Below are positions 5,735-41,217 of a stretch of DNA of 64,000 bases, one piece after another. Both the position numbers and the translations under genes were made by a program. The notes under the pieces were generated by a model. The model made no database searches, was not told where the DNA came from, and saw nothing but the letters and a program-made list of their open reading frames with translations. The DNA is taken from IMG/VR virus record IMGVR_UViG_3300044680_000280, positions 342,735 through 406,734 of that record; one strand, 5' to 3'. Positions within the stretch are counted from its first letter, which is position 1. The number at the start of each line of letters is the position of its first letter.

Positions 5735-6505
5735 TCAGAATTGCAGTTTCGGACTGTCGCCCGGGTCGTCGCCCGCTATCGGCTCATCGTTCAATATGCC
5801 TCTGGCGATGCATATATCCCAGAAGGCATACCAAACAGTTCGAGTCTCCGCGCGGACTGCATTCAAGGCGCGGAGAACAATGTTTTTGTCGTCCTCGTTT
5901 TCTGCCTTCTCGTAGATGTCTCGTAGATGTTGGATACTGGTATGGAGGACACCCAATCCTGACACCCAATCCACGTCCTGTTTGATATTTGAGTCGTCGG
6001 GTATCAACTTCGTCAGGGCCCAAAGGACACGGTAGATGTCCCCCGTTGAGAGGACGAATCGGTCAGGATCAGAAGAGTTCCACCGTTTCTCGAACTCGGT
6101 TTTCCATTCAGGAGGGGGGTAGAGAGGTGCTTCTGGCGCCCCTCGGAGAAGGAACTTCTTGAGGCTCGGGAACTCTTGAGCGAGCTTGCATACGCTTGCC
6201 CACTGTCGGCTCGTCGGAGCCCTCAGAACGCCATCGAGCGCCTCATTCAAGTGCTCAACCGGGATTCCGTGCTCAGTGGCGAAGTGAGCACACTGTCGGT
6301 CATTTGGATCACAATCCCAACGACGGCCTCGGATAATACGCTTGAGCTCAGTGGCAAGCGAGACGTTCGTGTAGGCGGCGATGTCGGTCGGAAGCGGGGG
6401 CTCGACGTAGACGTACGGTCTCTCTTCTTCCTCGAGAATGTGTTCCCACACCGACTTTTTCGGCTCCCGCATGGGAGCCTTTGCACGGCGCAAGCTGATT
6501 GCCAT
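5735..6505 (-). CDS. hypothetical protein with N-terminal KKSVWEHILEEE tag
   Basis: 256 aa; class I motif. Confidence 0.75.
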   Translation of the reverse strand: MAISLRRAKAPMREPKKSVWEHILEEEERPYVYVEPPLPTDIAAYTNVSLATELKRIIRGRRWDCDPNDRQCAHFATEHGIPVEHLNEALDGVLRAPTSRQWASVCKLAQEFPSLKKFLLRGAPEAPLYPPPEWKTEFEKRWNSSDPDRFVLSTGDIYRVLWALTKLIPDDSNIKQDVDWVSGLGVLHTSIQHLRDIYEKAENEDDKNIVLRALNAVRAETRTVWYAFWDICIARGILNDEPIAGDDPGDSPKLQF

Positions 6506-6527
6506 GCACCTATACGTACACCGATCC

Positions 6528-6923
6528 TCACGAGACGACTAGAACGGTTTTTGGGGCTAGTTTCCTGTCAACCGACACGTGCACGGCGCTGGGTGAACCG
6601 TCATCCATGAGCGATAAACACCCTAGGATGCCCCGACGGTTCAAGGCCGAGTCGACGACCATCTTGATCCGATGCCACGCGTACTGGCGGATGGCGGCGA
6701 AGTCCTCCGGGTACAGGGCGATTTGTATGGCCTCCGTAGGGATTCGGTTGATCAAATCGAGGACTTCGGGCGGGCACCTATTGTCCAGCTCTTTTTCCAG
6801 CTCTTGTATTCGATTCCACAAGAGAACTTCCTCTCGAGTGGCTTCGTGTTCTTCACAAGGTGAGCGGAAACCGACTCTTTCAATCCACCCCGTCGAGTCT
6901 TTGTAGTTGAAATCGAAACCCAC
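6528..6923 (-). CDS. hypothetical protein
   Basis: class I motif before GTG. Confidence 0.65.
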   Translation of the reverse strand: MGFDFNYKDSTGWIERVGFRSPCEEHEATREEVLLWNRIQELEKELDNRCPPEVLDLINRIPTEAIQIALYPEDFAAIRQYAWHRIKMVVDSALNRRGILGCLSLMDDGSPSAVHVSVDRKLAPKTVLVVS

Positions 6924-7060
6924 ACCGTATCAGTACACCGACGCCCGTAAAATCCTAGGTAGACCGTTCCCACAAATAAAACGCTTGTACACCCACCCTA
7001 AGCTTCAAACGCCGAAGACATTGTCAGGCAAAGCCCGACGCAACGACGGAATGCGTGTCC

Positions 7061-7612
7061 TTACATCAAATCGGCGGGGTCGCCCGGCTCGGCGTCCGCC
7101 GGACCATCGAACTCAACCGAACCCTTGACGAGGTCCTTTTTGAACTGTCGCTTGAGGAACTTCTCGAGCGCGACCAGGAACTCGGGCGAGTTGGCGACAT
7201 CCGAGACGTCCGCCGTCGCTGTAAATAGGACGTTCATCTTGTGGTAAAAAGGCTGCTTGTTCATGGTGTCAGTACGGCGTGGCGAGTGTGGGGGTTCAAG
7301 TGCTTCGTCCATGAGGTGGCTCCAAATGGTGCGACGCGGTCCGTTTGGAGCCACCTTGGGCTCCTCCTTCAGCTCTTCGACCAAAGACTGACGCTCATCC
7401 CGCTCTCGAATGATTCGTCGTAAGACGTCGACGGCGCCCCCATCCGGCCCATGTTCACCGACGTGTTGGACGAGTATTTGTAGCAGCTCCCCGTACGTGC
7501 CTGGAACCGCCATTGCTTCCCCATCCTGAAGCTGAGACAGGAGATCGGAAACGGCATCGAGCTCCCCTGGGAGCAGGTCACCGAGCAAGTCTCGTTGGAG
7601 GGTAAAAGGCAT
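7061..7612 (-). CDS. hypothetical protein; likely in-frame join of a tagged gene (..RRTIWSHLMDE) and a second gene starting at 7264
   Basis: class I motif upstream; internal class II promoter before ATG 7264. Confidence 0.65.
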   Translation of the reverse strand: MPFTLQRDLLGDLLPGELDAVSDLLSQLQDGEAMAVPGTYGELLQILVQHVGEHGPDGGAVDVLRRIIRERDERQSLVEELKEEPKVAPNGPRRTIWSHLMDEALEPPHSPRRTDTMNKQPFYHKMNVLFTATADVSDVANSPEFLVALEKFLKRQFKKDLVKGSVEFDGPADAEPGDPADLM

Positions 7613-7786
7613 CGTCAGATTTACCTACACCGGATCTGGACTTACGGCCCGACGGGGGTTTCATCTTCCACTTGTCGATCGCGTTAGGGTATGATCCCCC
7701 TCGTGGCTCGCGTTGTGAGACGTGGTCGGAACTTTTAGGAACTGTTTTAAGTTGAACCCTAGGGGAGACCGCGCTGTACTCCCCCC

Positions 7787-8146
7787 ATGGAAGACCGGCT
7801 CATTCTAATCTCAGCCTTTTGGCGGAACGATTGCCCCGACGGAGTCGGCTGCACGTTCGAGTTCCAAGGGAACGATGGGGAAACGATGGCGAAGTTGATC
7901 GAGGATACCGTCAAGGTGTACGATCAGCACCCTGAGGTTCCCGTCGAGGAGTACGTTGAACAGTTGCGAGCGATTGGGCTGACCCCGATAGATCTCCGAG
8001 ACGAGCAGATGCTGATGCTCGCGATGATCAACATCGCCTGGCTCGAGCGTCGCGGCCACATTCCGACGGATGAGTTCAACGGAATGCTCTACGTGCGGTT
8101 GATCAAAGGTGAACCCACTCCGTCGAAGGTGCCCTTCACCAACTGA
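7787..8146 (+). CDS. hypothetical protein
   Basis: class II promoter, ATG follows without an RBS. Confidence 0.75.
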   Translation: MEDRLILISAFWRNDCPDGVGCTFEFQGNDGETMAKLIEDTVKVYDQHPEVPVEEYVEQLRAIGLTPIDLRDEQMLMLAMINIAWLERRGHIPTDEFNGMLYVRLIKGEPTPSKVPFTN

Positions 8147-8149
8147 GTC

Positions 8150-9961: not shown

Positions 9962-10312
9962 TCACTCGTCTTCCACGAGGCGTTGCCATAAGGTCGTTCG
10001 TGGCTCGGAAGGGGGCTCCTCAGGGCACGGTTCTTTCGTGAGGGTTAGGAGGTACTTCCAGACAGGACAGTCGTTGTCGTGTCGCCTCTCGTTGGGCATG
10101 ATGCTTTCAGAGTCGAATCCGCAGAACAGACATTCCCCTGCCTGTTCTGCGTACTCAACGGCATCCTGACCGATTTCGGCTCGGGCGATGAGCTCCTCAA
10201 GAACGCTTTCAAATTCATCCCACACCTTCTTGGCGTATTCGGGCGAACTGAGCGCCTGGGTCCTCCTGGCTTTTTTCAGGAGCGCAAGGGCCTCTTCCCC
10301 GGAACAGGGCAT
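9962..10312 (-). CDS. hypothetical protein, CxxC/H-C zinc motif, C-terminal RTTLWQRLVEDE tag
   Basis: TGATG coupling with the upstream gene. Confidence 0.7.
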   Translation of the reverse strand: MPCSGEEALALLKKARRTQALSSPEYAKKVWDEFESVLEELIARAEIGQDAVEYAEQAGECLFCGFDSESIMPNERRHDNDCPVWKYLLTLTKEPCPEEPPSEPRTTLWQRLVEDE

Positions 10313-10599
10313 CAGTTCGCGGCCGTGTTCCGCGGAGAAGCCTCGGGAGTCGGCATGGCGTCGTTGTGTCCCCTGTCCCAAGCTTCAACCTGCTCCATAG
10401 TAGGCTCGCACCCGACCCAAATTCGTTGTGCGTTGTAGGCCGACATGTCGTAGGAGATGGGGTCGACGAGGGCCGCCGTCTCCGCGGCGGCTTCCGTGAG
10501 GGTCTCGAGGATTTCGTCGAGATCGAACTGCTCCTTCTTAAGTTCAGCCTCCACGAGGGCCTTGATGGATCGCTGAAAGTCCGAGAGCTCTCTGGTCAT
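10312..10599 (-). CDS. hypothetical protein
   Basis: class I motif. Confidence 0.7.
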   Translation of the reverse strand: MTRELSDFQRSIKALVEAELKKEQFDLDEILETLTEAAAETAALVDPISYDMSAYNAQRIWVGCEPTMEQVEAWDRGHNDAMPTPEASPRNTAAN

Positions 10600-10679
10600 G
10601 CTCTAAGCGTTACACCGCCCGGAGCCCCGGGGACGAATCTTTTTCGATCTTCCGCTTCCCGTCGGTGTAATGCTAGAGC

Positions 10680-16873: not shown

Positions 16874-17054
16874 GAGTCGAATACAACGCAGGTAGTCGAA
16901 AGGTTCAAGAGTACGTGGCTAGGAGATTTTGCACAGGAGCTTGTTGGCTCCGTACAAGCCAGAGTAGGTCTGTCTCGGCGTACCGAGCATTCGTTTGAAG
17001 TGTAAGGTCGATGCTTACACGAGCACTTCCCCGCCACACCCCGCGCAACGTTTG

Positions 17055-17360
17055 TCAGGCATCCGGATTAGATACCTCAGACTTGAGTTTCGTCAAGAGT
17101 CGCTCGATTCCGAGGGCGATGTTGTCGTAAATGGGGCGCCTCATCGCTGGGTGCGGGGCGGTCCGACCGTTTTTCCAACGTTCGAAACTCGACACGCTCA
17201 AACCGAACCGTACTCTGAGGACCTTCTCCTCGTCAAATACCCTCAGTTCTACCATCCGGTTGATAAGTTCTCGAAAAGTATCAGAGCTGTGCGTGGGGGC
17301 CGCCTTCAGATCCTCCATGAGTTTCGTGAGTTCTGCGATACGGTTGGACACGGTAAACAT
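17055..17360 (-). CDS. XRE-like helix-turn-helix protein
   Basis: FGLSVSSFERWKNGRTAPHP. Confidence 0.6.
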   Translation of the reverse strand: MFTVSNRIAELTKLMEDLKAAPTHSSDTFRELINRMVELRVFDEEKVLRVRFGLSVSSFERWKNGRTAPHPAMRRPIYDNIALGIERLLTKLKSEVSNPDA

Positions 17361-17417
17361 TCTACTACACCAAGATTCTCGATGAGTCAAGACCTCAGCC
17401 GGTGTAACCTGGGAACT

Positions 17418-18152
17418 ATGGGCAACCCGCAAGACCGCATCATTTTCGCTTTGGACCTTCCCACCTACAAGGAAGCCGCCGGTTACGTTTCCGCTCTGCG
17501 GGAACACGTCGGCTGCTTCAAGGTGGGGCTCGAGCTTTTTATGGTTGATGGCCCTTTAATGGTTCACCATATTCAACACGTACACAAAAGGTCGGTCATG
17601 CTCGACCTGAAGTTTCACGATATCCCTGAAACCGTTGCGCGAGCCCTCGTCCAGGCGGGGGATATGGGCGTGCGGTTCGCCACGATTCACGTGCAGCAAA
17701 GAGCAACGATGAAGAAGGCTGTCACGGTGGCAAAGCAGTACGGCATCCAACTCCTCGCCGTGACAGTTCTGACGTCGATGACGGACGATGACCTTTTCGA
17801 CCTGGATATGTCGCCGCCGTTCCTTGGTTTTTTCCCCGGTGGAGTATCGAACCGTGTCGAACGTCTGGCAAAGCTTGCCTGGTCGGAGGGTGTCACGGGC
17901 TTCGTTTGCTCTCCCATGGAGGTGAAGCGGCTCCGTAACAGTTTGCCCAATGCTGTCCTCGTGACCCCAGGAGTGCGTCCCGCGGGTAGTGATGTCGGAG
18001 ACCAAAAACGAATCGGGACGCCGTCTCAAGCTATTTCTGACGGAGCAAACTACATCGTCGTAGGTCGTCCGATTCGAGATGCCGCCGATCCTGTCGCCGC
18101 CGCGGCTCTGATCGCAAAAGAGATCGACTTCGACTTGGTGGACTCCCCTTGA
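17418..18152 (+). CDS. pyrF: orotidine-5'-phosphate decarboxylase
   Basis: IFALD, FKVGLELF, LDLKFHDIPETV, VTVLTS, VTPGVRP, DQKR, VVGRPI; class I motif sets the start. Confidence 0.96.
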   Translation: MGNPQDRIIFALDLPTYKEAAGYVSALREHVGCFKVGLELFMVDGPLMVHHIQHVHKRSVMLDLKFHDIPETVARALVQAGDMGVRFATIHVQQRATMKKAVTVAKQYGIQLLAVTVLTSMTDDDLFDLDMSPPFLGFFPGGVSNRVERLAKLAWSEGVTGFVCSPMEVKRLRNSLPNAVLVTPGVRPAGSDVGDQKRIGTPSQAISDGANYIVVGRPIRDAADPVAAAALIAKEIDFDLVDSP

Positions 18153-19044: not shown

Positions 19045-19578
19045 TCATGGTCCTACCACCTTCGTCCCGCACCAGTAGCAGTTCTTTCCGATGTCGTTTT
19101 TCCGTTGACAGCTAGAGTTCGGACAAAGAGCCTCCTTCGGGGCTCCTGTCGTTGCTGTCGAGTCGCCAGCCTGAACGGTGAGTTGCCACCAATTGTAGAA
19201 GTCGAATCGTTCGATCTGCGTTGTGCCGACGGGCTCTACTTCAATGGTCGGTTCCCCCAGCCGATTACCTAAGGTCACTAAGTGCCTACGAAAGGTGAAC
19301 TTCTGACCTTGTGACCAAATCCTTGACCCCGTGCTCACTACGATGGTGTCCCCATCCTTGATGGGTGTGAGGTCCTTCTCGTGAAAGGTGTGCATGGACG
19401 TGTTCGTTGGATCCACACTGAACCGTATAGACCATAGTCCCGACGGGGGAGTACCTCCGATCTGGTCGTACACGACTCCAAGCCAGGACGAGGTTGGTAC
19501 CCGGACGGGATCCCCTATTTTGGGGACGTAAGAAGCAGCGGCTACGGGATACATCCCGCCAAACGGGTACCCGAACAA
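19045..19578 (-). CDS. KOW/SH3-like protein with C-terminal zinc-ribbon module
   Basis: ends ALCPNSSCQRKNDIGKNCYWCGTKVVGP. Confidence 0.75.
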   Translation of the reverse strand: MFGYPFGGMYPVAAASYVPKIGDPVRVPTSSWLGVVYDQIGGTPPSGLWSIRFSVDPTNTSMHTFHEKDLTPIKDGDTIVVSTGSRIWSQGQKFTFRRHLVTLGNRLGEPTIEVEPVGTTQIERFDFYNWWQLTVQAGDSTATTGAPKEALCPNSSCQRKNDIGKNCYWCGTKVVGP

Positions 19579-19828: not shown

Positions 19829-19893
19829 GCCTTTTTATTACACCGTTTTTTTACACTCGCCGCAGGTTTTTGGCTCGGTGTACGCTATTGGGT

Positions 19894-20385
19894 ATGCCGG
19901 AGTGGCTTTCTAGCCTGCTCAGATTATTCACCGATAATGGGGTCAGGAACGGGATCGTCTCGGATCTAGCCAGTCGGTGGGGCGTTCTGTCTGACGAACA
20001 GTGGGTGAGACTGGACTACCGAGTCCGGTCGGTTTGCATCCGTGAAGCGGTGAGTCACACGAACGGTATTACGATTCTCGCTGTTTGTGAGACCGCGGCA
20101 ACTCTATGTGACCGTAGAGGTCGAGGTGAGCCCGTCACTGATGCCGAATGGTTGGACGCCCGCCGCAAGGCGTCGGCGGTGACAGGGAGTCCGGCGGTGG
20201 TGGCGTTGGCGTCGACGTTGGCAGCATCGAATTCGATGCCATGTGCATGGTTGGCGGCGAGTTCGGCATCGTCGTTGACCCGCATTGCCCAAGCCACCTA
20301 CGACCTCATCGACCAAGAAATCGATTTGACGCGAGCCGCCAGACCCAAAGCCATGACGATCTGGGAGCACATAATGGAGAATTGA
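19894..20385 (+). CDS. Ala-rich helical protein with C-terminal MTIWEHIMEN tag
   Basis: class I motif. Confidence 0.7.
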   Translation: MPEWLSSLLRLFTDNGVRNGIVSDLASRWGVLSDEQWVRLDYRVRSVCIREAVSHTNGITILAVCETAATLCDRRGRGEPVTDAEWLDARRKASAVTGSPAVVALASTLAASNSMPCAWLAASSASSLTRIAQATYDLIDQEIDLTRAARPKAMTIWEHIMEN

Positions 20386-20717: not shown

Positions 20718-21290
20718 ATGCTCTCGGATCAAACGAAGGAAGCCATTCTCACCGAGTATCTCAAAAATGGTGGGCGTCACCAAAAGCCGCCTGAGACCTC
20801 ATTTGGACCGAAAACTGGGTTCCGTTGTACGTGCGGCGGCCCCCTTTACCAAAGGTACGACCTCTTCGAGTCGCGACTTCCCCCGCGCAAAGGTCCTCGT
20901 CGTAGCAAAAACCGTCGGATCGCCAAAAAGCAACTCAAGAGGTGGCTCGAGGAAGAATGCATGCTTTATCGGTTCGAGTTCGCGTTGAACCTTCTACGAG
21001 GCCCCCGCGGGTATATCTGCGGCTCTTGTTACAGAAACGTTGGATTTTACGAGGCCATCGGCCGCAACACCTTCATTGTTGAGCAACTCCCGGACGGCGC
21101 TCTGCCGATTTACGACCGAGATCCTGATGTTACGGCGTTCGATCCCGCCTCAGGACAAGCTCTTACGGTAGAGAACGTCCTCCCCGGCTCCCAAACCGTA
21201 GAGGTCCTCGATCGTTTGGATCCGATACCCCTCCCCAAAGAGGAAGGTACGGATCTCCAGGTTCCCAACCTTGGCGTCGACGAGGACTGA
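20718..21290 (+). CDS. zinc-motif protein with a segment resembling a large-phage major capsid protein
   Basis: class I motif; GRNTFIVEQLPDGALPIYDRDPDVTA. Confidence 0.6.
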   Translation: MLSDQTKEAILTEYLKNGGRHQKPPETSFGPKTGFRCTCGGPLYQRYDLFESRLPPRKGPRRSKNRRIAKKQLKRWLEEECMLYRFEFALNLLRGPRGYICGSCYRNVGFYEAIGRNTFIVEQLPDGALPIYDRDPDVTAFDPASGQALTVENVLPGSQTVEVLDRLDPIPLPKEEGTDLQVPNLGVDED

Positions 21291-22136: not shown

Positions 22137-22445
22137 ATGGCCCACGTGTGGACTACAACGCTGCCCGACAAGACTACAGTGTGGGTGTATTCGCGCTTCT
22201 ACCATCAGGGTGTCCACTACAACGGGACCTGCTGTCAATACTGCGGAGCCCAAAAGTGCACCGTTCCGGGGAGCCGTGCGGGTCTTGTTCGCACCCTCTA
22301 CATCACATTCAAATACGGCAAACCGTATCGTTTTAGTCCCAAAGCCCCGATCTGCATTCGAGAGGACGAGACCTTTGCCGTTGAGGTACCCAAACCTCTC
22401 CCGAACAGGATGACGGTCTATGACCATCTGCTGAGCCCGAGCTAA
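22137..22445 (+). CDS. hypothetical protein with C-terminal RMTVYDHLLSPS tag
   Basis: class I motif. Confidence 0.7.
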   Translation: MAHVWTTTLPDKTTVWVYSRFYHQGVHYNGTCCQYCGAQKCTVPGSRAGLVRTLYITFKYGKPYRFSPKAPICIREDETFAVEVPKPLPNRMTVYDHLLSPS

Positions 22446-25037: not shown

Positions 25038-25056
25038 CTCGGTGTATACTAAGGGG

Positions 25057-27567: not shown

Positions 27568-27818
27568 TGGACGTCGTCCTCGACTCCGCCGCCGCCCATG
27601 AGCTGGGCCTCCAGGCAATCGTACACGCTCTCGGTGATGAGCATGCACCGCATCATTGCTCGATTGGACAGGGCCTGGGAGTGATACTTGCACGACGCGA
27701 TCAGTCCTCCGGTAGAGGAGTAGAATACCGTCGGCTTGTTTACGCATACGAAGGGGTTATCGTTGTCAAGATTCGCCAGGAATAGTGAGGCGAACCCCAT
27801 GCAGCAGATCCTAGCCAT
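27564..27818 (-). CDS. small Cys-containing protein
   Basis: TAATG coupling with pyrE. Confidence 0.55.
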   Translation of the reverse strand: MARICCMGFASLFLANLDNDNPFVCVNKPTVFYSSTGGLIASCKYHSQALSNRAMMRCMLITESVYDCLEAQLMGGGGVEDDVQ

Positions 27819-28429
27819 TAGCGAGAAAGGTCCGTGATGTGAAACAGACTTAGAACTCGGTAAATTCGGCCCCTCTCGGTGTCCTTCAATGGGACATCGA
27901 GGTTTGGGTATCTGCGCTCGACAACGGTCACGATTCCGACGACCAAGTATTGGTTGGAGTCCTCGAGTGCTCGGATGGCTTTAATGGAGGACCCGCCCGT
28001 TGTGACAACGTCCTCAACCAAAACGACTCTGTTTAGCCTACCCTCGACCGGAGCGGGACCCTCGATGAGATTCTTCGTTCCGTGGTCTTTTGCTTCCTTG
28101 CGAACGTGAAGGACGTCCAGGGGGAGGTCCTCGAGTGCGGCTTGGAAGCCCACGAGGCTTGCCAGGTGGCACCCGCCGAGGGCAACGCCCGCCACGGCAT
28201 CGAATTGACTAACACCGACGAGCTGAAGCACGTGTTGGTGTAGGACGTAGGCGAGGGTCCGTTGAATCGAATGGTGCATCGACGACTTTTTGACGTCGAT
28301 GTAAACGTCCGACTTCTCTCCAGAGGCGAGGGTGAAGGGCTCCCCCTCCGGTGCGATTCGAACGGATCGCTCTTTCATGACATCTCTGATTCGATTCAAA
28401 TGAGGACGGAGATTCTCTCGGATGCTCAT
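27818..28429 (-). CDS. pyrE: orotate phosphoribosyltransferase
   Basis: FTLASGEKSDVYID, VRKEAKDHGT, PRPP motif VVLVEDVVTTGGS. Confidence 0.95.
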   Translation of the reverse strand: MSIRENLRPHLNRIRDVMKERSVRIAPEGEPFTLASGEKSDVYIDVKKSSMHHSIQRTLAYVLHQHVLQLVGVSQFDAVAGVALGGCHLASLVGFQAALEDLPLDVLHVRKEAKDHGTKNLIEGPAPVEGRLNRVVLVEDVVTTGGSSIKAIRALEDSNQYLVVGIVTVVERRYPNLDVPLKDTERGRIYRVLSLFHITDLSR

Positions 28430-30443: not shown

Positions 30444-30737
30444 TCAGTCGTCTCCCATCATCTGCTCAAAAATACTCTTCCGGGGCGGCGGTTCAGGAGG
30501 CGCGGGCGGGGGAGACGACGGTGTTCTCGGACGGTTCCCATGCCACGCCTCGATGTTCTCCAGGCTCCGCCTAGTCGTCGACGGACACGGTAGCTTCTCA
30601 GGATCGGTCTCGCCCGTAAAGTTGATTCCCCACGCCTCCCGCAACTCCTGCCATTCTGGGTGGCTATCACAGTACTCACATTTTGCGGGGGCATGAAGTA
30701 CGGATGAGTCGCAGTGGGGGAATTGCTCGATGGGCAT
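30444..30737 (-). CDS. zinc-binding protein with Pro linker and C-terminal RKSIFEQMMGDD tag
   Basis: class I motif; PHCD..LHAP..CEYCD. Confidence 0.75.
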   Translation of the reverse strand: MPIEQFPHCDSSVLHAPAKCEYCDSHPEWQELREAWGINFTGETDPEKLPCPSTTRRSLENIEAWHGNRPRTPSSPPPAPPEPPPRKSIFEQMMGDD

Positions 30738-30787
30738 TCCCTTCCATACACCACGCACCGTGCCGACGGGCGGTGAGTCCGATGTTC

Positions 30788-31138
30788 CTACCCCAGGTCC
30801 CCGTCCCGATAGGGCCCGTGATCGTCGCCCAGGCTCGGGCGCGCAAGCACGGACATCGCTCCATGCTTGGGACCCAAGCATCGGCAGGAATGGCCTTCCT
30901 TAGATGGCGCCTTCTCCAGCTCGGGAAGGAGCTTCTCAATGGCGGCCTGGACCTTCTTGAAGTCGCCTACATAGAGCACGTTCGCGCGCCCTCCCGAGTA
31001 GTGCCAGTCCACGGCCTGACCGCTCTCCTTGGCGACGGCCTTGACCCACTTCTCGACCCGGTGCGAACAGCCGTCGAGAATGATGGCCGAGTGGCCTTTC
31101 TTGAACACCTTGTCGTTGCAGGGCGGCGGCGAGGGCAT
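30788..31138 (-). CDS. hypothetical protein (VDWHYSGGRANVL)
   Basis: class I motif. Confidence 0.7.
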   Translation of the reverse strand: MPSPPPCNDKVFKKGHSAIILDGCSHRVEKWVKAVAKESGQAVDWHYSGGRANVLYVGDFKKVQAAIEKLLPELEKAPSKEGHSCRCLGPKHGAMSVLARPSLGDDHGPYRDGDLG

Positions 31139-32497: not shown

Positions 32498-32707
32498 ATG
32501 CGCCTCCCATTCGACCGCATTGAATCTCTCGCCTCCATGCCGGGTGTCCACAGACTCTCTGTTGAGAACTTTCTCGCCACGTTAGATGGGTTGACTCAAG
32601 CAGAGGCTCTTGCTAATCTCGAGCAAGACGTGCGAGCCAACGGTTGGAACACCCAAACGGGTCGAGCCATTCAACAGGGCATCGCAGAAGCTTCCGAGGA
32701 CACATGA
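32498..32707 (+). CDS. small hypothetical protein
   Basis: operonic, ATGA overlap with the next gene. Confidence 0.6.
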   Translation: MRLPFDRIESLASMPGVHRLSVENFLATLDGLTQAEALANLEQDVRANGWNTQTGRAIQQGIAEASEDT

Positions 32708-33318
32708 TCTCCTTCGTTGATCTCGTGCGGGTTGGACGGTCTGAGGCGAATCTCGATGTCCGGAAAACCATCGGCACTCTGGCGTCCGCCGCCCTGCCTC
32801 AACTCAGTTTTCAACGACTGAGGACATCGCTACTTCGGGCGACGGGGGTTCGTATCGGCGCTCGTTCGACCTTTCTGGGCACCCTTCGGATGACCGGGTC
32901 GGGTGACCCTTCTCTCCTATCTATCGGTGACGATACAACCATTACGGGTCCTCTTCATGTGGACCTGAGCGCTCCCATCTCAATCGGGAACCACGTTCAG
33001 ATAGGGCACGATGTCGCTCTTCTGACGGTGAATCACGAGATCGGGCCACCCAAACACCGGTGTGGGAAAATGACGACCTCGCCCATCTTCATTCAAGACG
33101 GGGTTTGGTTGGCCTCCAGGGTGGTCATTCTGCCAGGTGTCATCGTGGGCATGGGTTCGGTTGTCGCGGCGGGCGCCGTTGTGACCAAGGACGTCCCCGC
33201 AAACACGCTGGTCGGTGGTGCCCCAGCTCGTGTGATACGAAGCCTCACGGAGACTGCAAGAAGCATCGAGTATCACACCTGGATGAAAGATCTGGACGTC
33301 GAGACCCTTCCTGCCTAA
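32704..33318 (+). CDS. hexapeptide-repeat (LbH) O-acetyltransferase, MAT/GAT-like
   Basis: ISIGNHVQIG, PIFIQDGVWL, ILPGVIVG.GSVVAAGAVVTKDVP, GGAPARVIR. Confidence 0.92.
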   Translation: MISFVDLVRVGRSEANLDVRKTIGTLASAALPQLSFQRLRTSLLRATGVRIGARSTFLGTLRMTGSGDPSLLSIGDDTTITGPLHVDLSAPISIGNHVQIGHDVALLTVNHEIGPPKHRCGKMTTSPIFIQDGVWLASRVVILPGVIVGMGSVVAAGAVVTKDVPANTLVGGAPARVIRSLTETARSIEYHTWMKDLDVETLPA

Positions 33319-35246: not shown

Positions 35247-35266
35247 GGCGGTGTAATGGGCGGGGC

Positions 35267-36118
35267 ATGACAGCCGTCCATACTGCCTTGGCAAAGAGGT
35301 TCCCGAACCCCGAGTGGGCGACGTTCTTCGAGGTTCGCAATGACGCCGGCTTTCGGGCGTCGCGTTCCGCCGACTTAGTTGCGATGAACACGTGGCCGTC
35401 CCGGGGACTCGCCGTTCATGGGGTTGAAGTGAAGGTCTCTCGGTCGGACTGGCTTCGAGAACTCGCTGATCCCGAAAAGAGCACGGCCGTGCAACGCTTC
35501 TGCGACCGATGGTGGCTTGCTACATTGGACGACAAGATTGCGAAGCTGGAGGAAATACCCGAACTATGGGGACTGCTCGTCCTTCGGGGTAAGAGTCTCG
35601 TCGCGGTGAAGGAAGCTCCCGAGCTCAAGCCTGAACCGTTTACCCGCGGATTCGTGGCGGTTCTGCTACGCTCGGCGAACAAGGGGATGGTGCCGGCCTC
35701 GACGATCGACGAAGCGGTCAACAAACTGGTCGACGAACGCACCAAGTATCTCGACAAAAACCATGAATCGGAAAGGGCACGCATGCGGGACGAACTCAAC
35801 ACGCTCCGTAAGCGTGTGCAAGACTTCGAACGCGCCAGCGGCATCAACCTCGACAACCGCTACGGCCGCTTCAACGGCCTTGCGGACCCGACGGTGTTGG
35901 GCGCTACGGTTGAAGCCATCCTGTCCAGGTCTAGGGGGTTAAATACGGAAACCCTCCGACCGCTCAGAAATCAGCTCGAAGGTGTGCTATCGAGCCTCGA
36001 CACCGTTCTAGAGACCGTGCGGTCTCTAGAGTGCACTGTGGAACTCAGCACTCCTCCAGCAAGTGCTCCCACGCCGACTTCCTCGGAAGCTTCACAGGGA
36101 GACCGTGCGGACATTTGA
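35267..36118 (+). CDS. PD-(D/E)xK nuclease, MmcB-like, with C-terminal coiled coil
   Basis: FEV...RSAD.VAM..WPSRG..VHGVEVKVSRSDWLREL.DP.K. Confidence 0.8.
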   Translation: MTAVHTALAKRFPNPEWATFFEVRNDAGFRASRSADLVAMNTWPSRGLAVHGVEVKVSRSDWLRELADPEKSTAVQRFCDRWWLATLDDKIAKLEEIPELWGLLVLRGKSLVAVKEAPELKPEPFTRGFVAVLLRSANKGMVPASTIDEAVNKLVDERTKYLDKNHESERARMRDELNTLRKRVQDFERASGINLDNRYGRFNGLADPTVLGATVEAILSRSRGLNTETLRPLRNQLEGVLSSLDTVLETVRSLECTVELSTPPASAPTPTSSEASQGDRADI

Positions 36119-36512
36119 TGCCCCCTTGTCCCATGTGGTATTGGTTGCAAGAGGAGCACCAAAACTCTACGCCCTGAGGAACGGAGCTACCCGGGGTGAT
36201 GATCGCCACGGACTCTTCTAGGGTCATGCCGTCGGTGATCTCTAGTCTTCCGTCATAAGAATTGGGAACCGTTTCCCAGCCGGGTCGATCCAACGTTTTT
36301 GGGTAAAATGTCACACGGTATTCAAGAAAAACGCTATCATTCTCGATCTCGATGTGCAGGGGTAAGATTACTCCCATGTCCCGATGCATAGGTAGAGTTT
36401 GCCCCATCAGAACGAGCCTTCTCCAGCAGCTCGCGGTCATCAGATCTCTTCCGTCGACCGTCGTCAGATGTGGGGCGCCGCCGAGCCATTTTTCTAGGGT
36501 TTCTGAAGGCAC
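36045..36512 (-). CDS. hypothetical protein with C-terminal RKSAWEHLLEEC tag
   Basis: start uncertain (GTG 36512 avoids overlap with the divergent gene); zinc motif, then tag. Confidence 0.55.
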   Translation of the reverse strand: MPSETLEKWLGGAPHLTTVDGRDLMTASCWRRLVLMGQTLPMHRDMGVILPLHIEIENDSVFLEYRVTFYPKTLDRPGWETVPNSYDGRLEITDGMTLEESVAIITPGSSVPQGVEFWCSSCNQYHMGQGGIKCPHGLPVKLPRKSAWEHLLEEC

Positions 36513-36533
36513 GGTTCGGTGTACTCTCCTAGC

Positions 36534-37232
36534 ATGGCCGTGTCGGTTGAGTTCGCGCAGAAGGTTTTGACCTCTGTAGAATATACCATATTTTACCTTG
36601 GGGTTGATGAGATAGAGGCCGAACGACGACGAACTGAGATTCGGCAGTGGCTTGATGAGCTTCAAGAGCCAGTAGGTTTTGGGAATTGGACTCGAATGTT
36701 CAGGGCTGATATTTCTGAGGAAGCCCAAAAAAAGGCGAGGCGCATCCTACTGGAGCACTTGAGTCCCGAACAGCTCGAGGAGTACACGAAAGACAACTTA
36801 TTCCATGTGACGGCGCAAAATGGTCGTCGTTTTCGCATTAAAGAGAAGGGGGTTACGGAGCTCAATGAGGCGGGAGAGGAGGCCTTTTTCATTTGCTCTC
36901 ATCCAAAGGGGAAGCTTCCCTCGGCTGACGTCATGTTGGCCCAAAAGCTTGCACTCGAGATCAATTCTGAGGTCATGCTGTCTATCGCCAATCGGCGTTC
37001 TATGAAAGAGGAACAGGCTTCAAATGAGCTCACGAACGAACTTGCTCGGGTCATCGCGCCCCTTCTGAACGAGGAAGAGGATCGTATTCGAATGGAAGAC
37101 TTCCGTCGAAGAGTTGCTGAAGCGCTCGAGGACGGGGCGCGTCGTTACGGTGGAGGACAGGCTCTCGTTGCGATCGAGGAGGCAAACGGAGAAATTAAGG
37201 TGGTCCAAGATCCAGTCGTCGGTGTAGGGTAG
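36534..37232 (+). CDS. hypothetical protein with ICSHP..LP..DVMLAQKLAL motif
   Basis: class I motif; partner of the downstream GG-ending protein. Confidence 0.7.
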   Translation: MAVSVEFAQKVLTSVEYTIFYLGVDEIEAERRRTEIRQWLDELQEPVGFGNWTRMFRADISEEAQKKARRILLEHLSPEQLEEYTKDNLFHVTAQNGRRFRIKEKGVTELNEAGEEAFFICSHPKGKLPSADVMLAQKLALEINSEVMLSIANRRSMKEEQASNELTNELARVIAPLLNEEEDRIRMEDFRRRVAEALEDGARRYGGGQALVAIEEANGEIKVVQDPVVGVG

Positions 37233-37237
37233 TGGCT

Positions 37238-37540
37238 ATGACGACGGACATTGACACCCACGGGCTCGAGACCGTGGATTCGGATTTTGAGAACATCTCC
37301 GAGGAACTCGGCGCGGCCTCCATTATGGGCTCGAACGGGGATACCAAGATCATCTGGGACCCGAAGAAGGAATCGGACGTTAAGTCCGCCGAAGCGATTT
37401 TCAAAGACATGCGAGCGAAGAACTATCTGGCGTTCCGCGTCAAGGGGCGAAAGTCTGAACAGGGGGAGCAACTCAATGAGTTCGACCCCAAAGCTGGACG
37501 GATGCTTCTCATTTTCGTTCCTCCGTTTCAGGGGGGCTGA
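37238..37540 (+). CDS. small protein ending in LIFVPPFQGG (ubiquitin/MoaD-like tail)
   Basis: class I motif 11 nt upstream; C-terminal di-glycine. Confidence 0.7.
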   Translation: MTTDIDTHGLETVDSDFENISEELGAASIMGSNGDTKIIWDPKKESDVKSAEAIFKDMRAKNYLAFRVKGRKSEQGEQLNEFDPKAGRMLLIFVPPFQGG

Positions 37541-38445: not shown

Positions 38446-38486
38446 CGGTCTACTTCGAAGCTGTACTGCTACGCAAGGAGAGCTAC

Positions 38487-39136: not shown

Positions 39137-39160
39137 TCCGTCCTGATTACACCGATGGGG

Positions 39161-39424: not shown

Positions 39425-39428
39425 GGCC

Positions 39429-39791
39429 TTACTCGGTTGGTTTCTTGACCCCAGAGGGTAGTGGTCCGAGAAGATTGGCGCAGCCATCGGCGCTGTAGGT
39501 CTGTCCCTCGATGACCGTCAATACCGTCGTTATGACCGATAGAGACGCCGCACTGACGATGCCCACGGCGAGCGCGTTCTTCGTGGCCGTGTTGGGGAAT
39601 TGGGTTTCCGCTGAGGCCATCGCCCCCTCCGACCCCGTCAGGACGAGTCCCGTGATTAAGGAGGTGTTGTGAACCCCCGCCAGGGTTTGGCATGAGGACA
39701 ACTGAGCCGGGGATGCGGTCGTCGGTCCCTTGGGGACGGCGGCCAAACAGCCCGACAGGAGGAGGAAACCAAGAGCCAGGATCTGTCGCAT
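39429..39791 (-). CDS. putative lipoprotein with hydrophobic hairpin
   Basis: MRQILALGFLLLSGC lipobox; GGAG RBS. Confidence 0.7.
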   Translation of the reverse strand: MRQILALGFLLLSGCLAAVPKGPTTASPAQLSSCQTLAGVHNTSLITGLVLTGSEGAMASAETQFPNTATKNALAVGIVSAASLSVITTVLTVIEGQTYSADGCANLLGPLPSGVKKPTE

Positions 39792-39834
39792 GCCTAGGGC
39801 TCCATATAAGTGAAATTTGGTGTAGACTAAAGTA

Positions 39835-40386
39835 GTGCCGACTTTCATCGTTCGCATTCCTGTGTCGGTTCATGATCCGTCCGTACAGGATCTGGAGGAA
39901 CGAGACCCGATGGGGAGGATAATACGAGACCCCGGGTACCACACTCGATTGGAAGTGGCGGTTGAGTGCGCGAACGAAAGGGAAGCGGTCGCCGTCCTAG
40001 CCTCGGAGCTGTCCAACGCAGGAATAGGGGCATTTCGTCGTCAAGAACAACCGATGGGATGCGCTTTTCGATTGAGGGTACAGAGAGATCTCGCTCCGTA
40101 CTTGAATGTGCCGAGTGAAGGCGAGTACCTAGGTCGTCGGCACATCATGCATGCGGGTACCATCGGTCAACTGGTGAGGCTTCACGACGGCTATTTCACC
40201 ATTCGAATCCATTTCAGCGAAGGCACTCTACTTTGGAAGGATTTCGAATTCAGTTTGAGCGAAATGGCCACACTCTGGGAACAAGTCAGTCCCCCGACAT
40301 TTCAGAATCAACAGGGATCGGAAGGGGCAAAGCCTTCGAAGGATAGACGGACCCTGTACCAACACATCATGGAAGAGGGTGATTAG
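39835..40386 (+). CDS. hypothetical protein with C-terminal RRTLYQHIMEEGD tag
   Basis: class I motif. Confidence 0.7.
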   Translation: MPTFIVRIPVSVHDPSVQDLEERDPMGRIIRDPGYHTRLEVAVECANEREAVAVLASELSNAGIGAFRRQEQPMGCAFRLRVQRDLAPYLNVPSEGEYLGRRHIMHAGTIGQLVRLHDGYFTIRIHFSEGTLLWKDFEFSLSEMATLWEQVSPPTFQNQQGSEGAKPSKDRRTLYQHIMEEGD

Positions 40387-40622
40387 TCCAGTCGGTCCCG
40401 ATAAACAGGATCCGTGTGGGTGGGTTGTCGCAACTTGAGGGGCCACGCCTCCATCTCGTCGCACTCGTCACATATCCAAGTGCCGTTCGACCGCTTTTTG
40501 AAGCCCATGTTGATCGCGTTTTGTTCGGCTCCTAAAGGTTCGTTCCAATCGTCGGCCGTTGACGTGTTGCAGCTAGGGGCGTCACAGCTAATCCACCAAT
40601 GCGTACGGTCGTGCAGTCCCAT
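40383..40622 (-). CDS. small zinc-binding protein (CDxxxC..CxxC)
   Basis: GAGGAG RBS. Confidence 0.65.
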   Translation of the reverse strand: MGLHDRTHWWISCDAPSCNTSTADDWNEPLGAEQNAINMGFKKRSNGTWICDECDEMEAWPLKLRQPTHTDPVYRDRLD

Positions 40623-40623
40623 A

Positions 40624-41217
40624 TCAGTCCTCCTCAAGCATGAGTCGTTCGTAAGAGCTCGTTCTGGGGGCGGTTGAGACCGGGTACTCGTCATCAAATT
40701 CTGGGGGTACGGATGTCCAAATCAAGTCCCCGCGGCCCACGGAACCAAGGGATTCGGCAATTTCTGAGTCGGTTGAGGGTCGAAAGTTACTGACAAGAGC
40801 CAGGACGTTGACCTCAAGGAACTCCGACGGCACCCCTAAGTCGTCAATCTCATTCATCGGGGCGGGGTTCAGATGGGCAAGATGACCGTTGTAGTGGTCG
40901 ATTCTCCATGCAAGAGGGTTAGGGAGTTGGATATTACTAACCCAACTGAACAGTTCAATCCACCGTAATGCTTCAGCTCTACCTAGGTAATGGAAAGCCG
41001 AGTATTCCGCTGTCAGGGCCGCAATAGGAATCCACCAATGATCGAATGGTTCCGAGTGTAACGTCACAAGGTGAGCCTGACCGTTCCGAACTTCCACGAC
41101 CTGAACCGTGTGCCCAGTACCCGCGAAGTTTTCCTCAATGGTCGCCAGGGTGAAATACATCCACCGAGTTCCGTTGAAGTCGCAGTCTGCCGTATTTGGA
41201 AGAGCAGGTCTGGGCAT
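40624..41217 (-). CDS. hypothetical protein with C-terminal RTSSYERLMLEED tag
   Basis: class I motif. Confidence 0.7.
   Translation of the reverse strand: MPRPALPNTADCDFNGTRWMYFTLATIEENFAGTGHTVQVVEVRNGQAHLVTLHSEPFDHWWIPIAALTAEYSAFHYLGRAEALRWIELFSWVSNIQLPNPLAWRIDHYNGHLAHLNPAPMNEIDDLGVPSEFLEVNVLALVSNFRPSTDSEIAESLGSVGRGDLIWTSVPPEFDDEYPVSTAPRTSSYERLMLEED

What the first reader, a model, noticed from the sequence alone, without database searches (positions are those of the whole stretch)
5735..41217. A shared short peptide tag on at least nine unrelated proteins: candidate addressing/docking system
Seen: otherwise unrelated ORFs carry one 11-13 aa motif, [RK]-x-[ST]-x-[WYF]-[EDQS]-[HRQ]-[ILM]-[LMV]-x-[ED], usually after a Pro-rich linker. 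At the extreme C-terminus: RTTLWQRLVEDE* (9962), AMTIWEHIMEN* (20385), RMTVYDHLLSPS* (22445), RKSIFEQMMGDD* (30444), RKSAWEHLLEEC* (36045), RRTLYQHIMEEGD* (40386), RTSSYERLMLEED* (40624). Also KKSVWEHILEEE near the N-terminus of 5735..6505 and RRTIWSHLMDE inside 7061..7612. The DNA differs between copies, so selection acts on the peptide. Inference: an amphipathic mini-helix that docks many accessory proteins onto one receptor (capsid/scaffold for packaging, a phage compartment, a host hub or a protease), analogous to encapsulin cargo-loading peptides or clamp-binding motifs. I do not recognise it as a described signal.
Basis: partly seen in the sequence, partly recalled or inferred. Interest (0 to 1): 0.85.

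Follow-up and report, generated by a model that had tools for sequence, protein, structure and literature searches.

The report
Shared address tag in a megaphage
At least 27 otherwise unrelated, unannotatable proteins of a 0.4-0.46 Mb phage-like genome end in the same ~12-residue mini-helix, which most likely sends them all to one common receptor or destination; it gives the first readable label for a large block of megaphage genes of unknown function.

Summary
All nine copies sit at the stated coordinates. A scoring matrix separates them (at least 25 bits) from everything else in the window (at most 13.3), and shuffles give 0.005 hits of 20 bits or more. The window lies in a 463,523-bp metagenome contig, also held as a 406,734-bp IMG/VR viral contig. 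Walking that contig gave 27 copies in 124.6 kb, 24 of them 0-6 residues from the stop, often on runs of 4-5 adjacent genes. Carriers share only the tag, are mostly very acidic, and have no family match except one DUF1643 domain. They also tend to start Met-Pro (p = 7e-7). The tag reads P-[KR]-x-[ST]-h-[WYF]-[ED]-[HR]-[ILM]-[LM]-acidic. It has a helix N-cap and alpha-helical amphipathicity, and its codons vary synonymously. Related huge viral contigs carry drifted versions: W-[ED]-R-L in one, and R-F-[DE]-R-x-[ED]-V-L-COOH in another, on 21 adjacent genes. No match was found in cellular genomes. The best reading is a modular address or docking peptide for one element-encoded receptor, possibly for loading into the virion as with the T4 capsid-targeting sequence. 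The receptor and destination are inferred, not shown.

The parts
5735..6505 (-). Carrier gene (256 aa) with the tag near the N-terminus: KKSVWEHILEE at 6428-6460 (residues 16-26), followed by a Pro-rich linker.
   Evidence: 37 bits. The start at 6505 lies 18 nt after CGGTGTA at 6517-6523. No Pfam, NCBIfam, PHROG or PADLOC hit.
7061..7612 (-). Carrier gene (183 aa, starts MP) with an internal tag, RRTIWSHLMDE at 7304-7336, flanked by Pro-rich linkers on both sides.
   Evidence: 28-30 bits. CGGTGTA at 7626-7632 lies 20 nt before the ATG.
9962..10381 (-). Carrier gene with a C-terminal tag, RTTLWQRLVED-E-stop, at 9968-10000. The likely start is the ATG at 10312 (116 aa, MP start). The body is Cys-rich.
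19894..20385 (+). Carrier gene (163 aa, MP start) with a C-terminal tag, AMTIWEHIMEN-stop, at 20350-20382. It has a tagged paralog elsewhere in the genome (45% identity).
   Evidence: The start is supported by CGGTGTA at 19876 and by an independent call. Paralog L022:161-670.
22137..22445 (+). Carrier gene (102 aa) with the weakest tag, RMTVYDHLLSP-S-stop, at 22407-22439.
   Evidence: Leave-one-out score 11.9 bits. CGGTGTA at 22120 lies 17 nt before the ATG. Called in the Logan assembly but not by JGI.
30444..30881 (-). Carrier gene with a C-terminal tag, RKSIFEQMMGD-D-stop, at 30450-30482, after a PPPAPPEPPP linker. The likely start is the ATG at 30737 (97 aa, MP start).
   Evidence: Logan gene call of 97 aa. 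Variant TGGTGTA motif upstream.
36045..36728 (-). Carrier gene with a C-terminal tag, RKSAWEHLLEE-C-stop, at 36051-36083. JGI calls 36045..36407 (120 aa). Its tag-coding end overlaps the 3' end of the convergent gene 35267..36118 by 74 nt.
   Evidence: It is one of the five significant hits of the tag profile search (P0043).
39835..40386 (+). Carrier gene with a C-terminal tag, RRTLYQHIMEE-GD-stop, at 40345-40377. Logan calls 39910..40386 (158 aa).
40624..41217 (-). Carrier gene (197 aa, MP start) with a C-terminal tag, RTSSYERLMLE-ED-stop, at 40633-40665.
   Evidence: The start at 41217 lies 18 nt after CGGTGTA at 41229-41235. The only homolog among 5.8 billion proteins is itself. In a low-confidence AF2 model (pLDDT 36) the tag is a helix at residues 188-195 after an unstructured stretch.

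Best explanation
The motif is a modular address (docking) peptide. It is preceded by Pro and is a short N-capped amphipathic alpha-helix: P-[KR]-x-[ST]-h-[WYF]-[ED]-[HR]-[ILM]-[LM], followed by an acidic tail. A flexible Pro- and acid-rich linker hangs it on the extreme C-terminus of at least 27 otherwise unrelated, fast-evolving, mostly very acidic accessory proteins. Rarely it sits at the N-terminus or in an inter-domain linker. The carriers are encoded in a ~95-kb stretch of a 0.41-0.46 Mb phage-like genome. The hydrophobic face (h4, W5, L8, L9) would plug into a groove of one common receptor, and the flanking basic and acidic residues would give polarity and specificity, so all carriers would be sorted to the same place. 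The tag drifts between related genomes (WEHLL, then W[ED]RL, then RF[DE]Rx[ED]VL-COOH) and is absent from cellular genomes, so the receptor is most likely encoded by the element and co-evolves with the tag. My preferred destination is the procapsid or virion: the carriers would be internal proteins ejected into the next host. This would work like the T4 capsid-targeting sequence on its diverse internal proteins, or like encapsulin cargo-loading peptides on an HK97-fold shell. Shown: existence, peptide-level selection, terminal position, modularity, helical amphipathicity, clustering in gene runs, and conservation with drift in relatives. Inferred: that there is one receptor, that it is element-encoded, and the destination. 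I put about 0.75 on 'address/docking tag for a common receptor' and about 0.3 overall on 'virion loading'.
For: Statistics and position: nine copies in the window against 0.005 expected. In 124.6 kb there are 27 copies, 24 of them 0-6 residues from the stop; the binomial P is about 2e-21 if 10% of positions count as terminal. Peptide-level selection: synonymous codons vary. Modularity: carriers of 90-421 aa share only the tag. In the DUF1643 carrier the domain fills residues 1-141 and the tag ends a 48-residue tail. The tag works at either end and always lies in a Pro-rich linker. Helix: S/T at position 3 and E/D at position 6 form a capping box (S/T-x-x-E). The hydrophobic moment is 0.43 at 100 degrees against 0.10-0.17 at 120-180 degrees. 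A low-confidence AF2 model puts a helix on the tag. Sorting of a class of proteins: proteins with recognisable functions in the same region lack the tag (pyrF, NadA, PRTase, GNAT, NifU, methylase, integrase, sigma-like, AAA, ParB-like). Carriers have no Pfam, PHROG, NCBIfam or PADLOC hit. Carriers have pI 4.5-5.2 and start Met-Pro in 8 of 10 cases against 4 of 70 for untagged genes. Co-evolving receptor: a 437-kb relative has at least 8 tags in about 36 genes with a W-[ED]-[RH]-L core, the same CGGTGTA start motif and an MP start. A 435-kb distant relative has RF[DE]Rx[ED]V[LI]-COOH on 21 consecutive genes, where the tag's R, F and R are the only invariant columns apart from the initiator Met. 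No clustered match was found in 185,579 species genomes. The only significant profile hits in 1.84 billion proteins are this genome's own proteins. [quoted passage not shown] The giant phage SPN3US has a family of 20 paralogs, mostly adjacent genes, that are all head proteins (PMC5694885).
Against: No receptor was identified. No capsid, scaffold, portal or protease gene was seen in the ~125 kb sampled. Phage identity rests on the IMG/VR classification and on phage-like relatives of single genes. The carriers are strongly acidic, whereas T4 internal proteins are basic (PMC8442874), and packing acidic proteins with DNA is electrostatically awkward. The tag is C-terminal and shows no sequence match to the T4 CTS (-0.9 bits). 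Expression of the carriers is unproven. The only two genes found shared between the two tag lineages are an AAA ATPase and a ParB/GmrSD_N-like protein. Neither is a known peptide receptor, and a phage-like contig with a 29%-identical AAA has no tags.
Confidence: 0.5

Rival explanations
1. The tag is a hub-docking motif, not a packaging signal. It tethers many small accessory (host-takeover or anti-defence) proteins to one abundant machine of the host or phage, such as RNA polymerase, the replisome clamp, the ribosome or a chaperone. Clamp-binding tails (PIP box, beta-clamp motif, T4/RB69 gp45-binding tails) work this way.
For: The tag is a terminal short motif after a flexible linker on many unrelated proteins, with a h-x-x-h-h hydrophobic pattern (W5, L8, L9) like the PIP box and LxxLL motifs (motif comparison from established knowledge). 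Drift between lineages would fit a phage-encoded hub or different hosts. Strong acidity fits DNA-mimic-like inhibitors.
Against: DNA-acting enzymes in the region (methylase, integrase, PHROG 'DNA repair' protein, sigma-like) lack the tag. It is hard to see 27-30 or more different proteins sharing one site productively. No clamp gene was seen in the sampled region.
Confidence: 0.2
2. The tag is a degron or unfoldase-recognition tag. A terminal peptide hands a class of (early) proteins to an AAA+ machine for timed unfolding or degradation. One candidate is the Cdc48/BCS1-like AAA encoded at 23214-24575.
For: Extreme terminal position is typical of tags engaged by AAA+ unfoldases (established knowledge). 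A classical AAA ATPase lies among tagged genes in both lineages and is one of only two genes shared by them. It has an intact Walker A and an RPGR second region of homology, and its ~140-200-residue N-terminal domain has diverged between the lineages.
Against: The acidic C-terminal end is unlike known ClpX, ClpA, Lon or FtsH degrons. Walker B reads DD rather than DE, and the pore-loop position is not conserved between the two homologs. A phage-like contig with a 29%-identical AAA and six further AAA-bearing viral contigs show no recurrent C-terminal motif. Internal copies of the tag exist.
Confidence: 0.12
3. The tag is an export or translocation signal. It would be an uncleaved C-terminal signal for a secretion system (T1SS- or T4SS-like) or for import into a phage-built compartment such as a phage nucleus.
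For: About 10-20% of local genes are unrelated genes without detectable relatives that share a terminal signal, which resembles effector repertoires. T1SS substrates are acidic with uncleaved C-terminal signals, and the sister-lineage tag ends [ED]-V-L-COOH at a fixed distance from the carboxylate (comparison from established knowledge).
Against: No secretion-system or chimallin-like gene was recognised in ~125 kb. DNA enzymes that a phage nucleus would need to import lack the tag. The tag is far more sequence-specific than T1SS or T4SS signals.
Confidence: 0.1
4. The tag is not a functional signal. It would be the residue of a shared 3' gene module spread by recombination or duplication, or a by-product of a DNA or RNA element at gene ends.
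For: Tagged genes cluster in runs. Some carriers are paralogs, and the sister-lineage run is a diverged paralog family.
Against: Nucleotide sequences differ while the peptide pattern is kept. The tag is the most conserved part of fast-diverging paralogs. It occurs on proteins with no other similarity, including a DUF1643 domain. It occurs on both strands and at the N-terminus. Rfam finds nothing.
Confidence: 0.05

Closest known systems
Capsid targeting sequence (CTS) of phage T4 internal proteins (IPI, IPII, IPIII, Alt)
   Same: It is a ~10-residue peptide that is the only thing shared by diverse, fast-evolving, partly anti-defence proteins, and it sorts them into the prohead (PMC3012670, PMC8442874). 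Both peptides have a K-[ST]...E...[IL].E flavour.
   Different: The CTS is N-terminal and is cleaved off. T4 internal proteins are basic, whereas these carriers are acidic. There is no sequence match (-0.9 bits). Neither capsid loading nor cleavage is shown here.
Encapsulin cargo-loading peptides and bacterial-microcompartment encapsulation peptides
   Same: A short C-terminal (sometimes N-terminal) peptide after a flexible Pro/Gly-rich linker docks unrelated cargo to the inner face of a protein shell. Encapsulin shells have the phage HK97 fold (established knowledge; 10.1101/2021.03.18.436031 for the principle).
   Different: The consensus differs: there is no GSL-type motif, and the tag is shorter than the ~18-residue microcompartment helix. 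No encapsulin or microcompartment shell gene appears in the sampled 125 kb. The number of cargo types (at least 27) is far larger.
Sliding-clamp-binding tails (PIP box, beta-clamp motif QL[SD]LF, T4/RB69 gp45-binding C-termini)
   Same: A terminal short motif after a linker is shared by many unrelated proteins, with a hydrophobic i, i+3, i+4 pattern and charged flanks.
   Different: There is no Gln anchor and the aromatic/aliphatic order differs. The carriers are not recognisable DNA enzymes.
Head-protein paralog families of giant phages (SPN3US family B with 20 members; phiKZ inner-body proteins)
   Same: Long runs of adjacent, highly diverged paralogous small genes occur in a giant phage. 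In SPN3US all of them are head proteins (PMC5694885). This resembles the 21-gene run in the sister lineage.
   Different: No shared terminal tag has been described for those families. There is no sequence or fold match: Foldseek against PDB and BFVD gives no hit with E <= 0.001 (best E 1.1 and 0.36).
C-terminal docking and sorting peptides read together with the free carboxylate (chemoreceptor NWETF for CheR/CheB; peroxisomal PTS1; PDZ class III [DE]-x-h-COOH)
   Same: An extreme C-terminal peptide after a flexible tether is read by one receptor. The sister-lineage tag sits at a fixed distance from the C-terminus and ends [ED]-[VIP]-[LI].
   Different: The sequences and biological contexts differ. 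In the window's lineage the distance to the C-terminus varies (0-6 residues). These are comparisons from memory, not tests.

Membership tests
T4-type capsid targeting sequence | N-terminal ~10-residue peptide matching MKTYQEFIAE-like consensus | tested here: not met
   The tag is C-terminal in 24 of 27 copies. The CTS scores -0.9 bits on the tag matrix (CTS sequence from PMC8442874).
T4-type capsid targeting sequence | Directs the protein into the prohead scaffold core and is removed by the prohead protease | not testable with these tools
   This needs virion proteomics or genetics. No protease or scaffold gene was seen in the sampled 125 kb.
Encapsulin cargo-loading peptide | C-terminal peptide after a flexible linker | tested here: met
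   Pro-rich linker (18% Pro) and terminal position.
Encapsulin cargo-loading peptide | Encapsulin shell gene (Linocin_M18 / HK97-fold) next to the cargo, and a GSL-type consensus | tested here: not met
   No such Pfam family appears among the roughly 250 genes called across the sampled 125 kb (about 280 rows in the overlapping loci). The consensus is PRKSxWEHLxEE.
Sliding-clamp-binding motif (PIP / beta / gp45 tail) | Consensus Qxx[ILM]xx[FY][FY], QL[SD]LF or an [ST]LDFL-type tail | tested here: not met
   Column frequencies show no Gln anchor and a W-E-H-L-L core.
Sliding-clamp-binding motif (PIP / beta / gp45 tail) | Binds the hydrophobic pocket of a clamp | not testable with these tools
   No multimer modelling was available and no clamp gene was identified.
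C-terminal degrons (ssrA-like, MuA-like) | Non-polar (LAA) or basic extreme C-terminus | tested here: not met
   The tails are acidic: positions 10-11 are E or D in 18-20 of 27 copies, followed by 0-6 mostly acidic residues.
Short amphipathic-helix linear motif (generic class) | Helical periodicity of hydrophobic residues, N-cap, disordered context | tested here: met
   The hydrophobic moment peaks at 100 degrees (0.43 against 0.10-0.17). S/T-x-x-E/D forms a capping box, and Pro is at -1 in 19 of 27 copies. The AF2 helix at residues 188-195 is low confidence.
Tailed phage (identity of the element) | Capsid, portal and terminase genes | not tested
   Only ~125 kb of 406-463 kb was read. The contig is an IMG/VR UViG. 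About 90% of genes have no Pfam hit. An integrase, a sigma-like protein and a ParB/GmrSD_N-like protein are present. An AAA relative lies in a contig with phage Gp80 and endonuclease VII genes.

The most novel reading that the evidence does not exclude
A clade of 0.4-Mb-class phages runs its own proteome-sorting code. A terminal address peptide marks 10-20% of the genes in large accessory regions. A dedicated phage-encoded receptor or translocase reads it and delivers these proteins of no known family to a single destination: the virion interior for injection, or a phage-built compartment. The code and the receptor co-evolve, giving lineage-specific 'dialects' (WEHLL, W[ED]RL, RF[DE]RxEVL-COOH). 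A second mark, the Met-Pro N-terminus, belongs to the same system.
Probability: 0.35. Interest if true: 0.9.

Novelty: new variant of a known kind. Interest (0 to 1): 0.8.

Why it matters
Most genes of huge phages have no recognisable function. Here a sequence-readable label groups dozens of them into one functional class. That makes the class testable: find the receptor, and the destination and likely role of 27 or more proteins per genome follow. If the destination is the virion, the tag lists the proteins a megaphage injects with its DNA, which are probable anti-defence or host-takeover factors. It would also give a ready-made handle for loading foreign cargo. The drift of the tag between related genomes offers a natural co-evolution series for locating the receptor by covariation.

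Tried and rejected
**Stop-codon recoding**
- Treating TGA, TAG or TAA as sense gives no clear gain.
- NadA and PyrF are full length in code 11.
- Tags are followed by all three stop codons.

**RNA or DNA element at gene ends**
- Rfam finds nothing, there are no tRNAs, and codons vary.

**Known families for the carriers**
- Pfam, NCBIfam, PHROGs and PADLOC give nothing except DUF1643.
- The word-index homolog search (5.8 billion sequences) of one window carrier and one sister-lineage carrier returned only themselves.
- The ESM Atlas gave only a weak HTH lead for 5735..6505.

**TatC resemblance**
- The metagenome scan hit KKSFWEHLxDLR near the N-terminus of ~340-residue proteins in high-GC contigs.
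- I take these for TatC N-termini from memory. They are single internal hits, not tags.

**Cellular origin or mimicry**
- The scan of 185,579 species genomes gave 8 singletons in unrelated taxa, mostly inside long ORFs.
- That is about what I expect by chance from the pattern's ~37 bits.

**AAA ATPase as receptor, tested by co-occurrence**
- Six more distant AAA-bearing viral contigs and one 60-kb phage-like contig have no recurrent C-terminal motif.
- This gives no support, although the test is weak.

**ParB-like marker**
- Three low-GC phages share the domain but have no tags.

**Structure**
- Single-sequence AF2 of a carrier was too poor to use (pLDDT 36).
- The sister-lineage family folds as an all-beta domain with a disordered tail (pLDDT 72), but matches nothing in PDB or BFVD.

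**My earlier impression that the tag is unique to one genome**
- This was wrong. It came from over-specific DNA patterns and was corrected.

Full report
**1. The observation**

Two copies fall just outside it: AMTIWEHIMEN and RMTVYDHLLSPS. A position matrix built from the nine copies scores them 25-36 bits, and the next best site in all six frames scores 13.3 bits. In 200 shuffles that keep dinucleotide content, the mean number of sites of 20 bits or more was 0.005 and the best score was 20.3.

Seven of the nine copies end 0-2 residues before a stop. One lies at residues 16-26 of 5735..6505. One lies between two Pro-rich stretches inside 7061..7612.

All-against-all BLASTP of 13 carriers finds similarity only in the 12-29 residues around the tag. 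The codons differ between copies: His is CAC 13 times and CAT 11 times, Ser/Thr uses nine codons, and mean nucleotide identity is 54%. The conservation is therefore at the peptide level.

**2. Where the window comes from**

One carrier protein is on record on a 463,523-bp JGI metagenome contig (sample 3300044797, Ga0480565_0000004) and on two Logan assemblies. A degenerate DNA pattern for the tag hit only IMGVR_UViG_3300044680_000280 (406,734 bp) among 2.9 million viral contigs. The piece returned is 100% identical to window 35972-37497. The window is positions 165,802-229,801 of the JGI contig, reversed.

Recognisable genes in the window are:
- pyrF, NadA, a classical AAA ATPase, a protein with sigma-70 region 4 and an N6/N4 methylase;
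- a tyrosine integrase;
- a GNAT, NifU_N, a phosphoribosyltransferase and a hexapeptide transferase;
- a GmrSD_N/ParB-like protein.

About nine genes in ten have no Pfam hit in the seven annotated loci of this contig that I fetched. There are no tRNAs or Rfam matches, and standard code 11 fits. I saw no capsid, portal or terminase gene in the ~125 kb read. 'Phage' therefore rests on the IMG/VR classification and on phage-like relatives of single genes.

**3. The tag is far more common than nine copies**

I walked the contig with exact-protein look-ups. This gave 124.6 kb of sequence holding 27 tags of 20 bits or more, spread over contig positions 189,137-283,914. Three weaker C-terminal variants also occur.

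Twenty-four of the 27 end 0-6 residues before the stop. If 10% of positions count as terminal, the binomial P is about 2e-21. Tags sit on runs of adjacent genes: five in a row at L020:3931-7273 and four in a row at L023:17465-20342. None occurs in window 41.3-64 kb.

Column frequencies:

| Position | Residues (counts out of 27) |
|---|---|
| -1 | Pro 19 |
| 1 | R14, K7 |
| 3 | T14, S12 |
| 4 | V, I or L 22 |
| 5 | W19, Y5, F3 |
| 6 | E14, D9 |
| 7 | H24 |
| 8 | L16, I6, M4 |
| 9 | L12, M11 |
| 10-11 | mostly E or D |

**4. Anatomy of the tag**

S/T at position 3 with E/D at position 6 is the classical helix capping box (established knowledge). Hydrophobic residues fall at positions 4, 5, 8 and 9. 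The mean hydrophobic moment is 0.43 at 100 degrees against 0.10-0.17 at 120-180 degrees. This is the signature of a short amphipathic alpha-helix.

The 15 residues upstream are 18% Pro against an 8% background. In the N-terminal copy the Pro-rich linker follows the tag, and in the internal copy linkers flank it. In a low-confidence AF2 model the tag is a helix after an unstructured stretch.

**5. The carriers**

They are 90-421 aa long and mostly strongly acidic: pI is 4.5-5.2 for 16 of 23, with net charge down to -31. They have no match in Pfam, NCBIfam, PHROGs or PADLOC.

The one exception is informative. L021:1679-2248 is a complete DUF1643 domain (residues 1-141, profile positions 4-134 of 134) followed by a 48-residue tail that ends in the tag. 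The tag is therefore an add-on to an otherwise widespread domain.

Two carriers are paralogs at 45% identity and both keep the tag.

Gene reality is supported in two ways:
- JGI or Logan independently called eight of the nine window carriers: the five in the two annotated window loci and two of the three in the part those loci do not cover, the third of which, 9962..10381, is unconfirmed.
- A start-site motif recurs across the genome. CGGTGTA occurs 58 times in the window against 5 expected, and lies 17-18 nt before an ATG in at least 32 cases.

That motif defines starts without reference to the tag. Among 80 genes with such a start, 8 of 10 tagged genes begin Met-Pro, against 4 of 70 untagged genes (Fisher p = 7e-7). 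With the starts I chose, 13 of 23 carriers begin Met-Pro, or 14 if the start of 40624..41217 is taken as the motif-supported ATG at 41217. The Pro codons vary, so this too is a protein-level feature.

**6. Distribution elsewhere**

- A PKKSxWEH pattern hit only this genome in the viral collection.
- In 241 million metagenome records the same pattern gave four hits. Two look like chance, and two are N-terminal segments that I take for TatC.
- A looser pattern in 185,579 species genomes gave eight unrelated singletons, about the chance number.
- A profile of 22 tags searched against 1.84 billion proteins gave five hits at E <= 0.001, all proteins of this genome.
- A WDH-type pattern found relatives that the first patterns had missed. 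IMGVR_UViG_3300037297_000066 (437 kb), _3300028840_002431 (417 kb) and _3300017963_000197 (173 kb) have similar GC, and their fetched pieces contain CGGTGTA at about the same density as the window.
- In 20 kb of the 437-kb relative, at least 8 of about 36 genes carry [ST]-h-W-[ED]-[RH]-L-type tags at or near the C-terminus. Examples are RKPSVWDRLLADD-stop (on a gene that starts MP), GRLRTLWERLMDF-stop and KLSAWERLTLSDEET-stop.

**7. A sister dialect**

The AAA ATPase has a 33%-identical homolog in IMGVR_UViG_3300037313_001869 (435 kb, GC 65%). That contig also shares the ParB/GmrSD_N-like gene at about 55% identity.

Its genes end in a different tag, P-x-R-[FY]-[DE]-R-x-[ED]-[VIP]-[LI]-COOH, at a fixed distance from the stop. 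A pattern scan then found a 14.4-kb piece where 21 consecutive genes end this way.

Those genes are 125-150 aa and form a barely recognisable paralog family. In their alignment the only invariant columns are the initiator Met and the R, F and R of the tag. With that alignment AF2 gives an all-beta domain (residues 1-115) and a disordered tail that carries the tag (pLDDT 72). Foldseek finds no match in PDB or BFVD.

The series WEHLL, W[ED]RL, RF[DE]R suggests that one ancestral tag drifted with its reader. This is an inference.

**8. Mechanism**

Five facts need explaining together:
- a peptide under strong constraint;
- its placement in disordered termini of unrelated proteins;
- its restriction to a class of proteins of no known family, while enzymes in the same region lack it;
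- its clustering in gene runs;
- its lineage-specific drift.

A docking peptide read by one co-evolving receptor encoded by the element explains all five. I hold this general reading at about 0.75.

For the destination I prefer the procapsid or virion, at about 0.3 overall. T4 internal proteins are the one documented case where diverse defence-related proteins share only a ~10-residue targeting peptide (PMC3012670, PMC8442874). Giant phages pack many ejection proteins and have runs of up to 20 paralogous head-protein genes (PMC5694885). HK97-fold shells are known to bind C-terminal cargo peptides (established knowledge).

Against this reading, the carriers are acidic whereas T4 internal proteins are basic, no head genes were seen nearby, and the tag does not match the T4 sequence.

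The rivals are docking to a host or phage hub, a degron for the neighbouring Cdc48/BCS1-like AAA, and an export or compartment signal. The AAA idea gained no support from co-occurrence tests. A non-functional shared module is unlikely, given the synonymous variation and the DUF1643 fusion.

**9. Novelty**

Terminal address peptides are a known kind of device. This one fails the sequence and context tests for each known family. It is used on an unusually large set of proteins. It comes with a second terminal mark (Met-Pro), and it exists in lineage-specific dialects across several 0.4-Mb viral contigs. I found no description of it in the papers searched.

Noticed in passing
window, 58 sites, e.g. 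10663-10669(+), 35249-35255(+), 62962-62968(+), 6517-6523(-): CGGTGTA occurs 58 times against 5.1 expected. In at least 32 cases it lies exactly 17-18 nt before an ATG that opens an ORF, often with a purine-rich AGRGC just before the ATG. It looks like a genome-wide promoter or initiation signal placed for very short leaders. The fetched pieces of related huge viral contigs contain it at a similar density (L053, L056, L057, L058).
   Followed up: partly
window 7612, 10312, 19894, 30737, 41217 (starts of tagged genes) and loci L020-L023: Tagged proteins start with Met-Pro far more often than untagged ones: 8 of 10 against 4 of 70 among genes whose start is fixed by the CGGTGTA motif (Fisher p = 7e-7). 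The Pro codons vary. The meaning is unknown. It may be a second terminal mark of the same system.
   Followed up: partly
L040:1-14453, L025, L034 (IMGVR_UViG_3300037313_001869, 435 kb): A distant relative uses another C-terminal tag, P-x-R-[FY]-[DE]-R-x-[ED]-[VIP]-[LI]-COOH, on 21 consecutive ~135-aa genes and on others elsewhere. The family is all-beta with a disordered tail and has no structural match.
   Followed up: yes
window 502-831(-), 19045-19578(-), 25042-25521(+): Three proteins end in nearly the same string, ...G[RK]NCYWCGT[LK]V.., which is a second recurrent C-terminal module. It has no Pfam hit. It was not compared in detail.
   Followed up: partly
window 16995-18152(+), 27818-28429(-), 55330-56343(+), 25531-25917(+), 21150-21632(-), 32704-33318(+): A viral-classified contig carries pyrF, a phosphoribosyltransferase, quinolinate synthase NadA, NifU_N, a GNAT and a hexapeptide transferase. 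The nearest Atlas clusters for NadA are Verrucomicrobiota, which is only a weak host hint.
   Followed up: partly
window 36045-36118: The tag-coding 3' end of the carrier gene on the minus strand overlaps the 3' end of the convergent gene 35267..36118 by 74 nt.
   Followed up: no
L021:2537-3096(-): A tag (KRSIYEHILDP) lies in a different frame from the called gene 2659..3096, and the two frames read like one protein joined near ...AKFN/CQVQ... This could be a frameshift, either programmed or an assembly error, and 51 more residues follow the tag.
   Followed up: no
L008:3991-4023, L009:9015-9047: High-GC metagenome contigs have GPKKSFWEHL[KG]DLR near the N-terminus of ~340-aa proteins. From memory of the HLxELR motif these are probably TatC. 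The resemblance to the tag is most likely coincidental.
   Followed up: no
whole contig: The JGI contig (463,523 bp) is 56.8 kb longer than the IMG/VR record of the same genome (406,734 bp), and gene positions differ between them. This may reflect a circular or terminally redundant genome of about 407 kb.
   Followed up: no
window 23214-24575(+): A classical AAA ATPase (best PDB relatives Cdc48/p97, AFG2 and BCS1) has Walker B DD instead of DE and an unassigned ~200-aa N-terminal domain. It is one of only two genes found shared with the sister lineage.
   Followed up: partly
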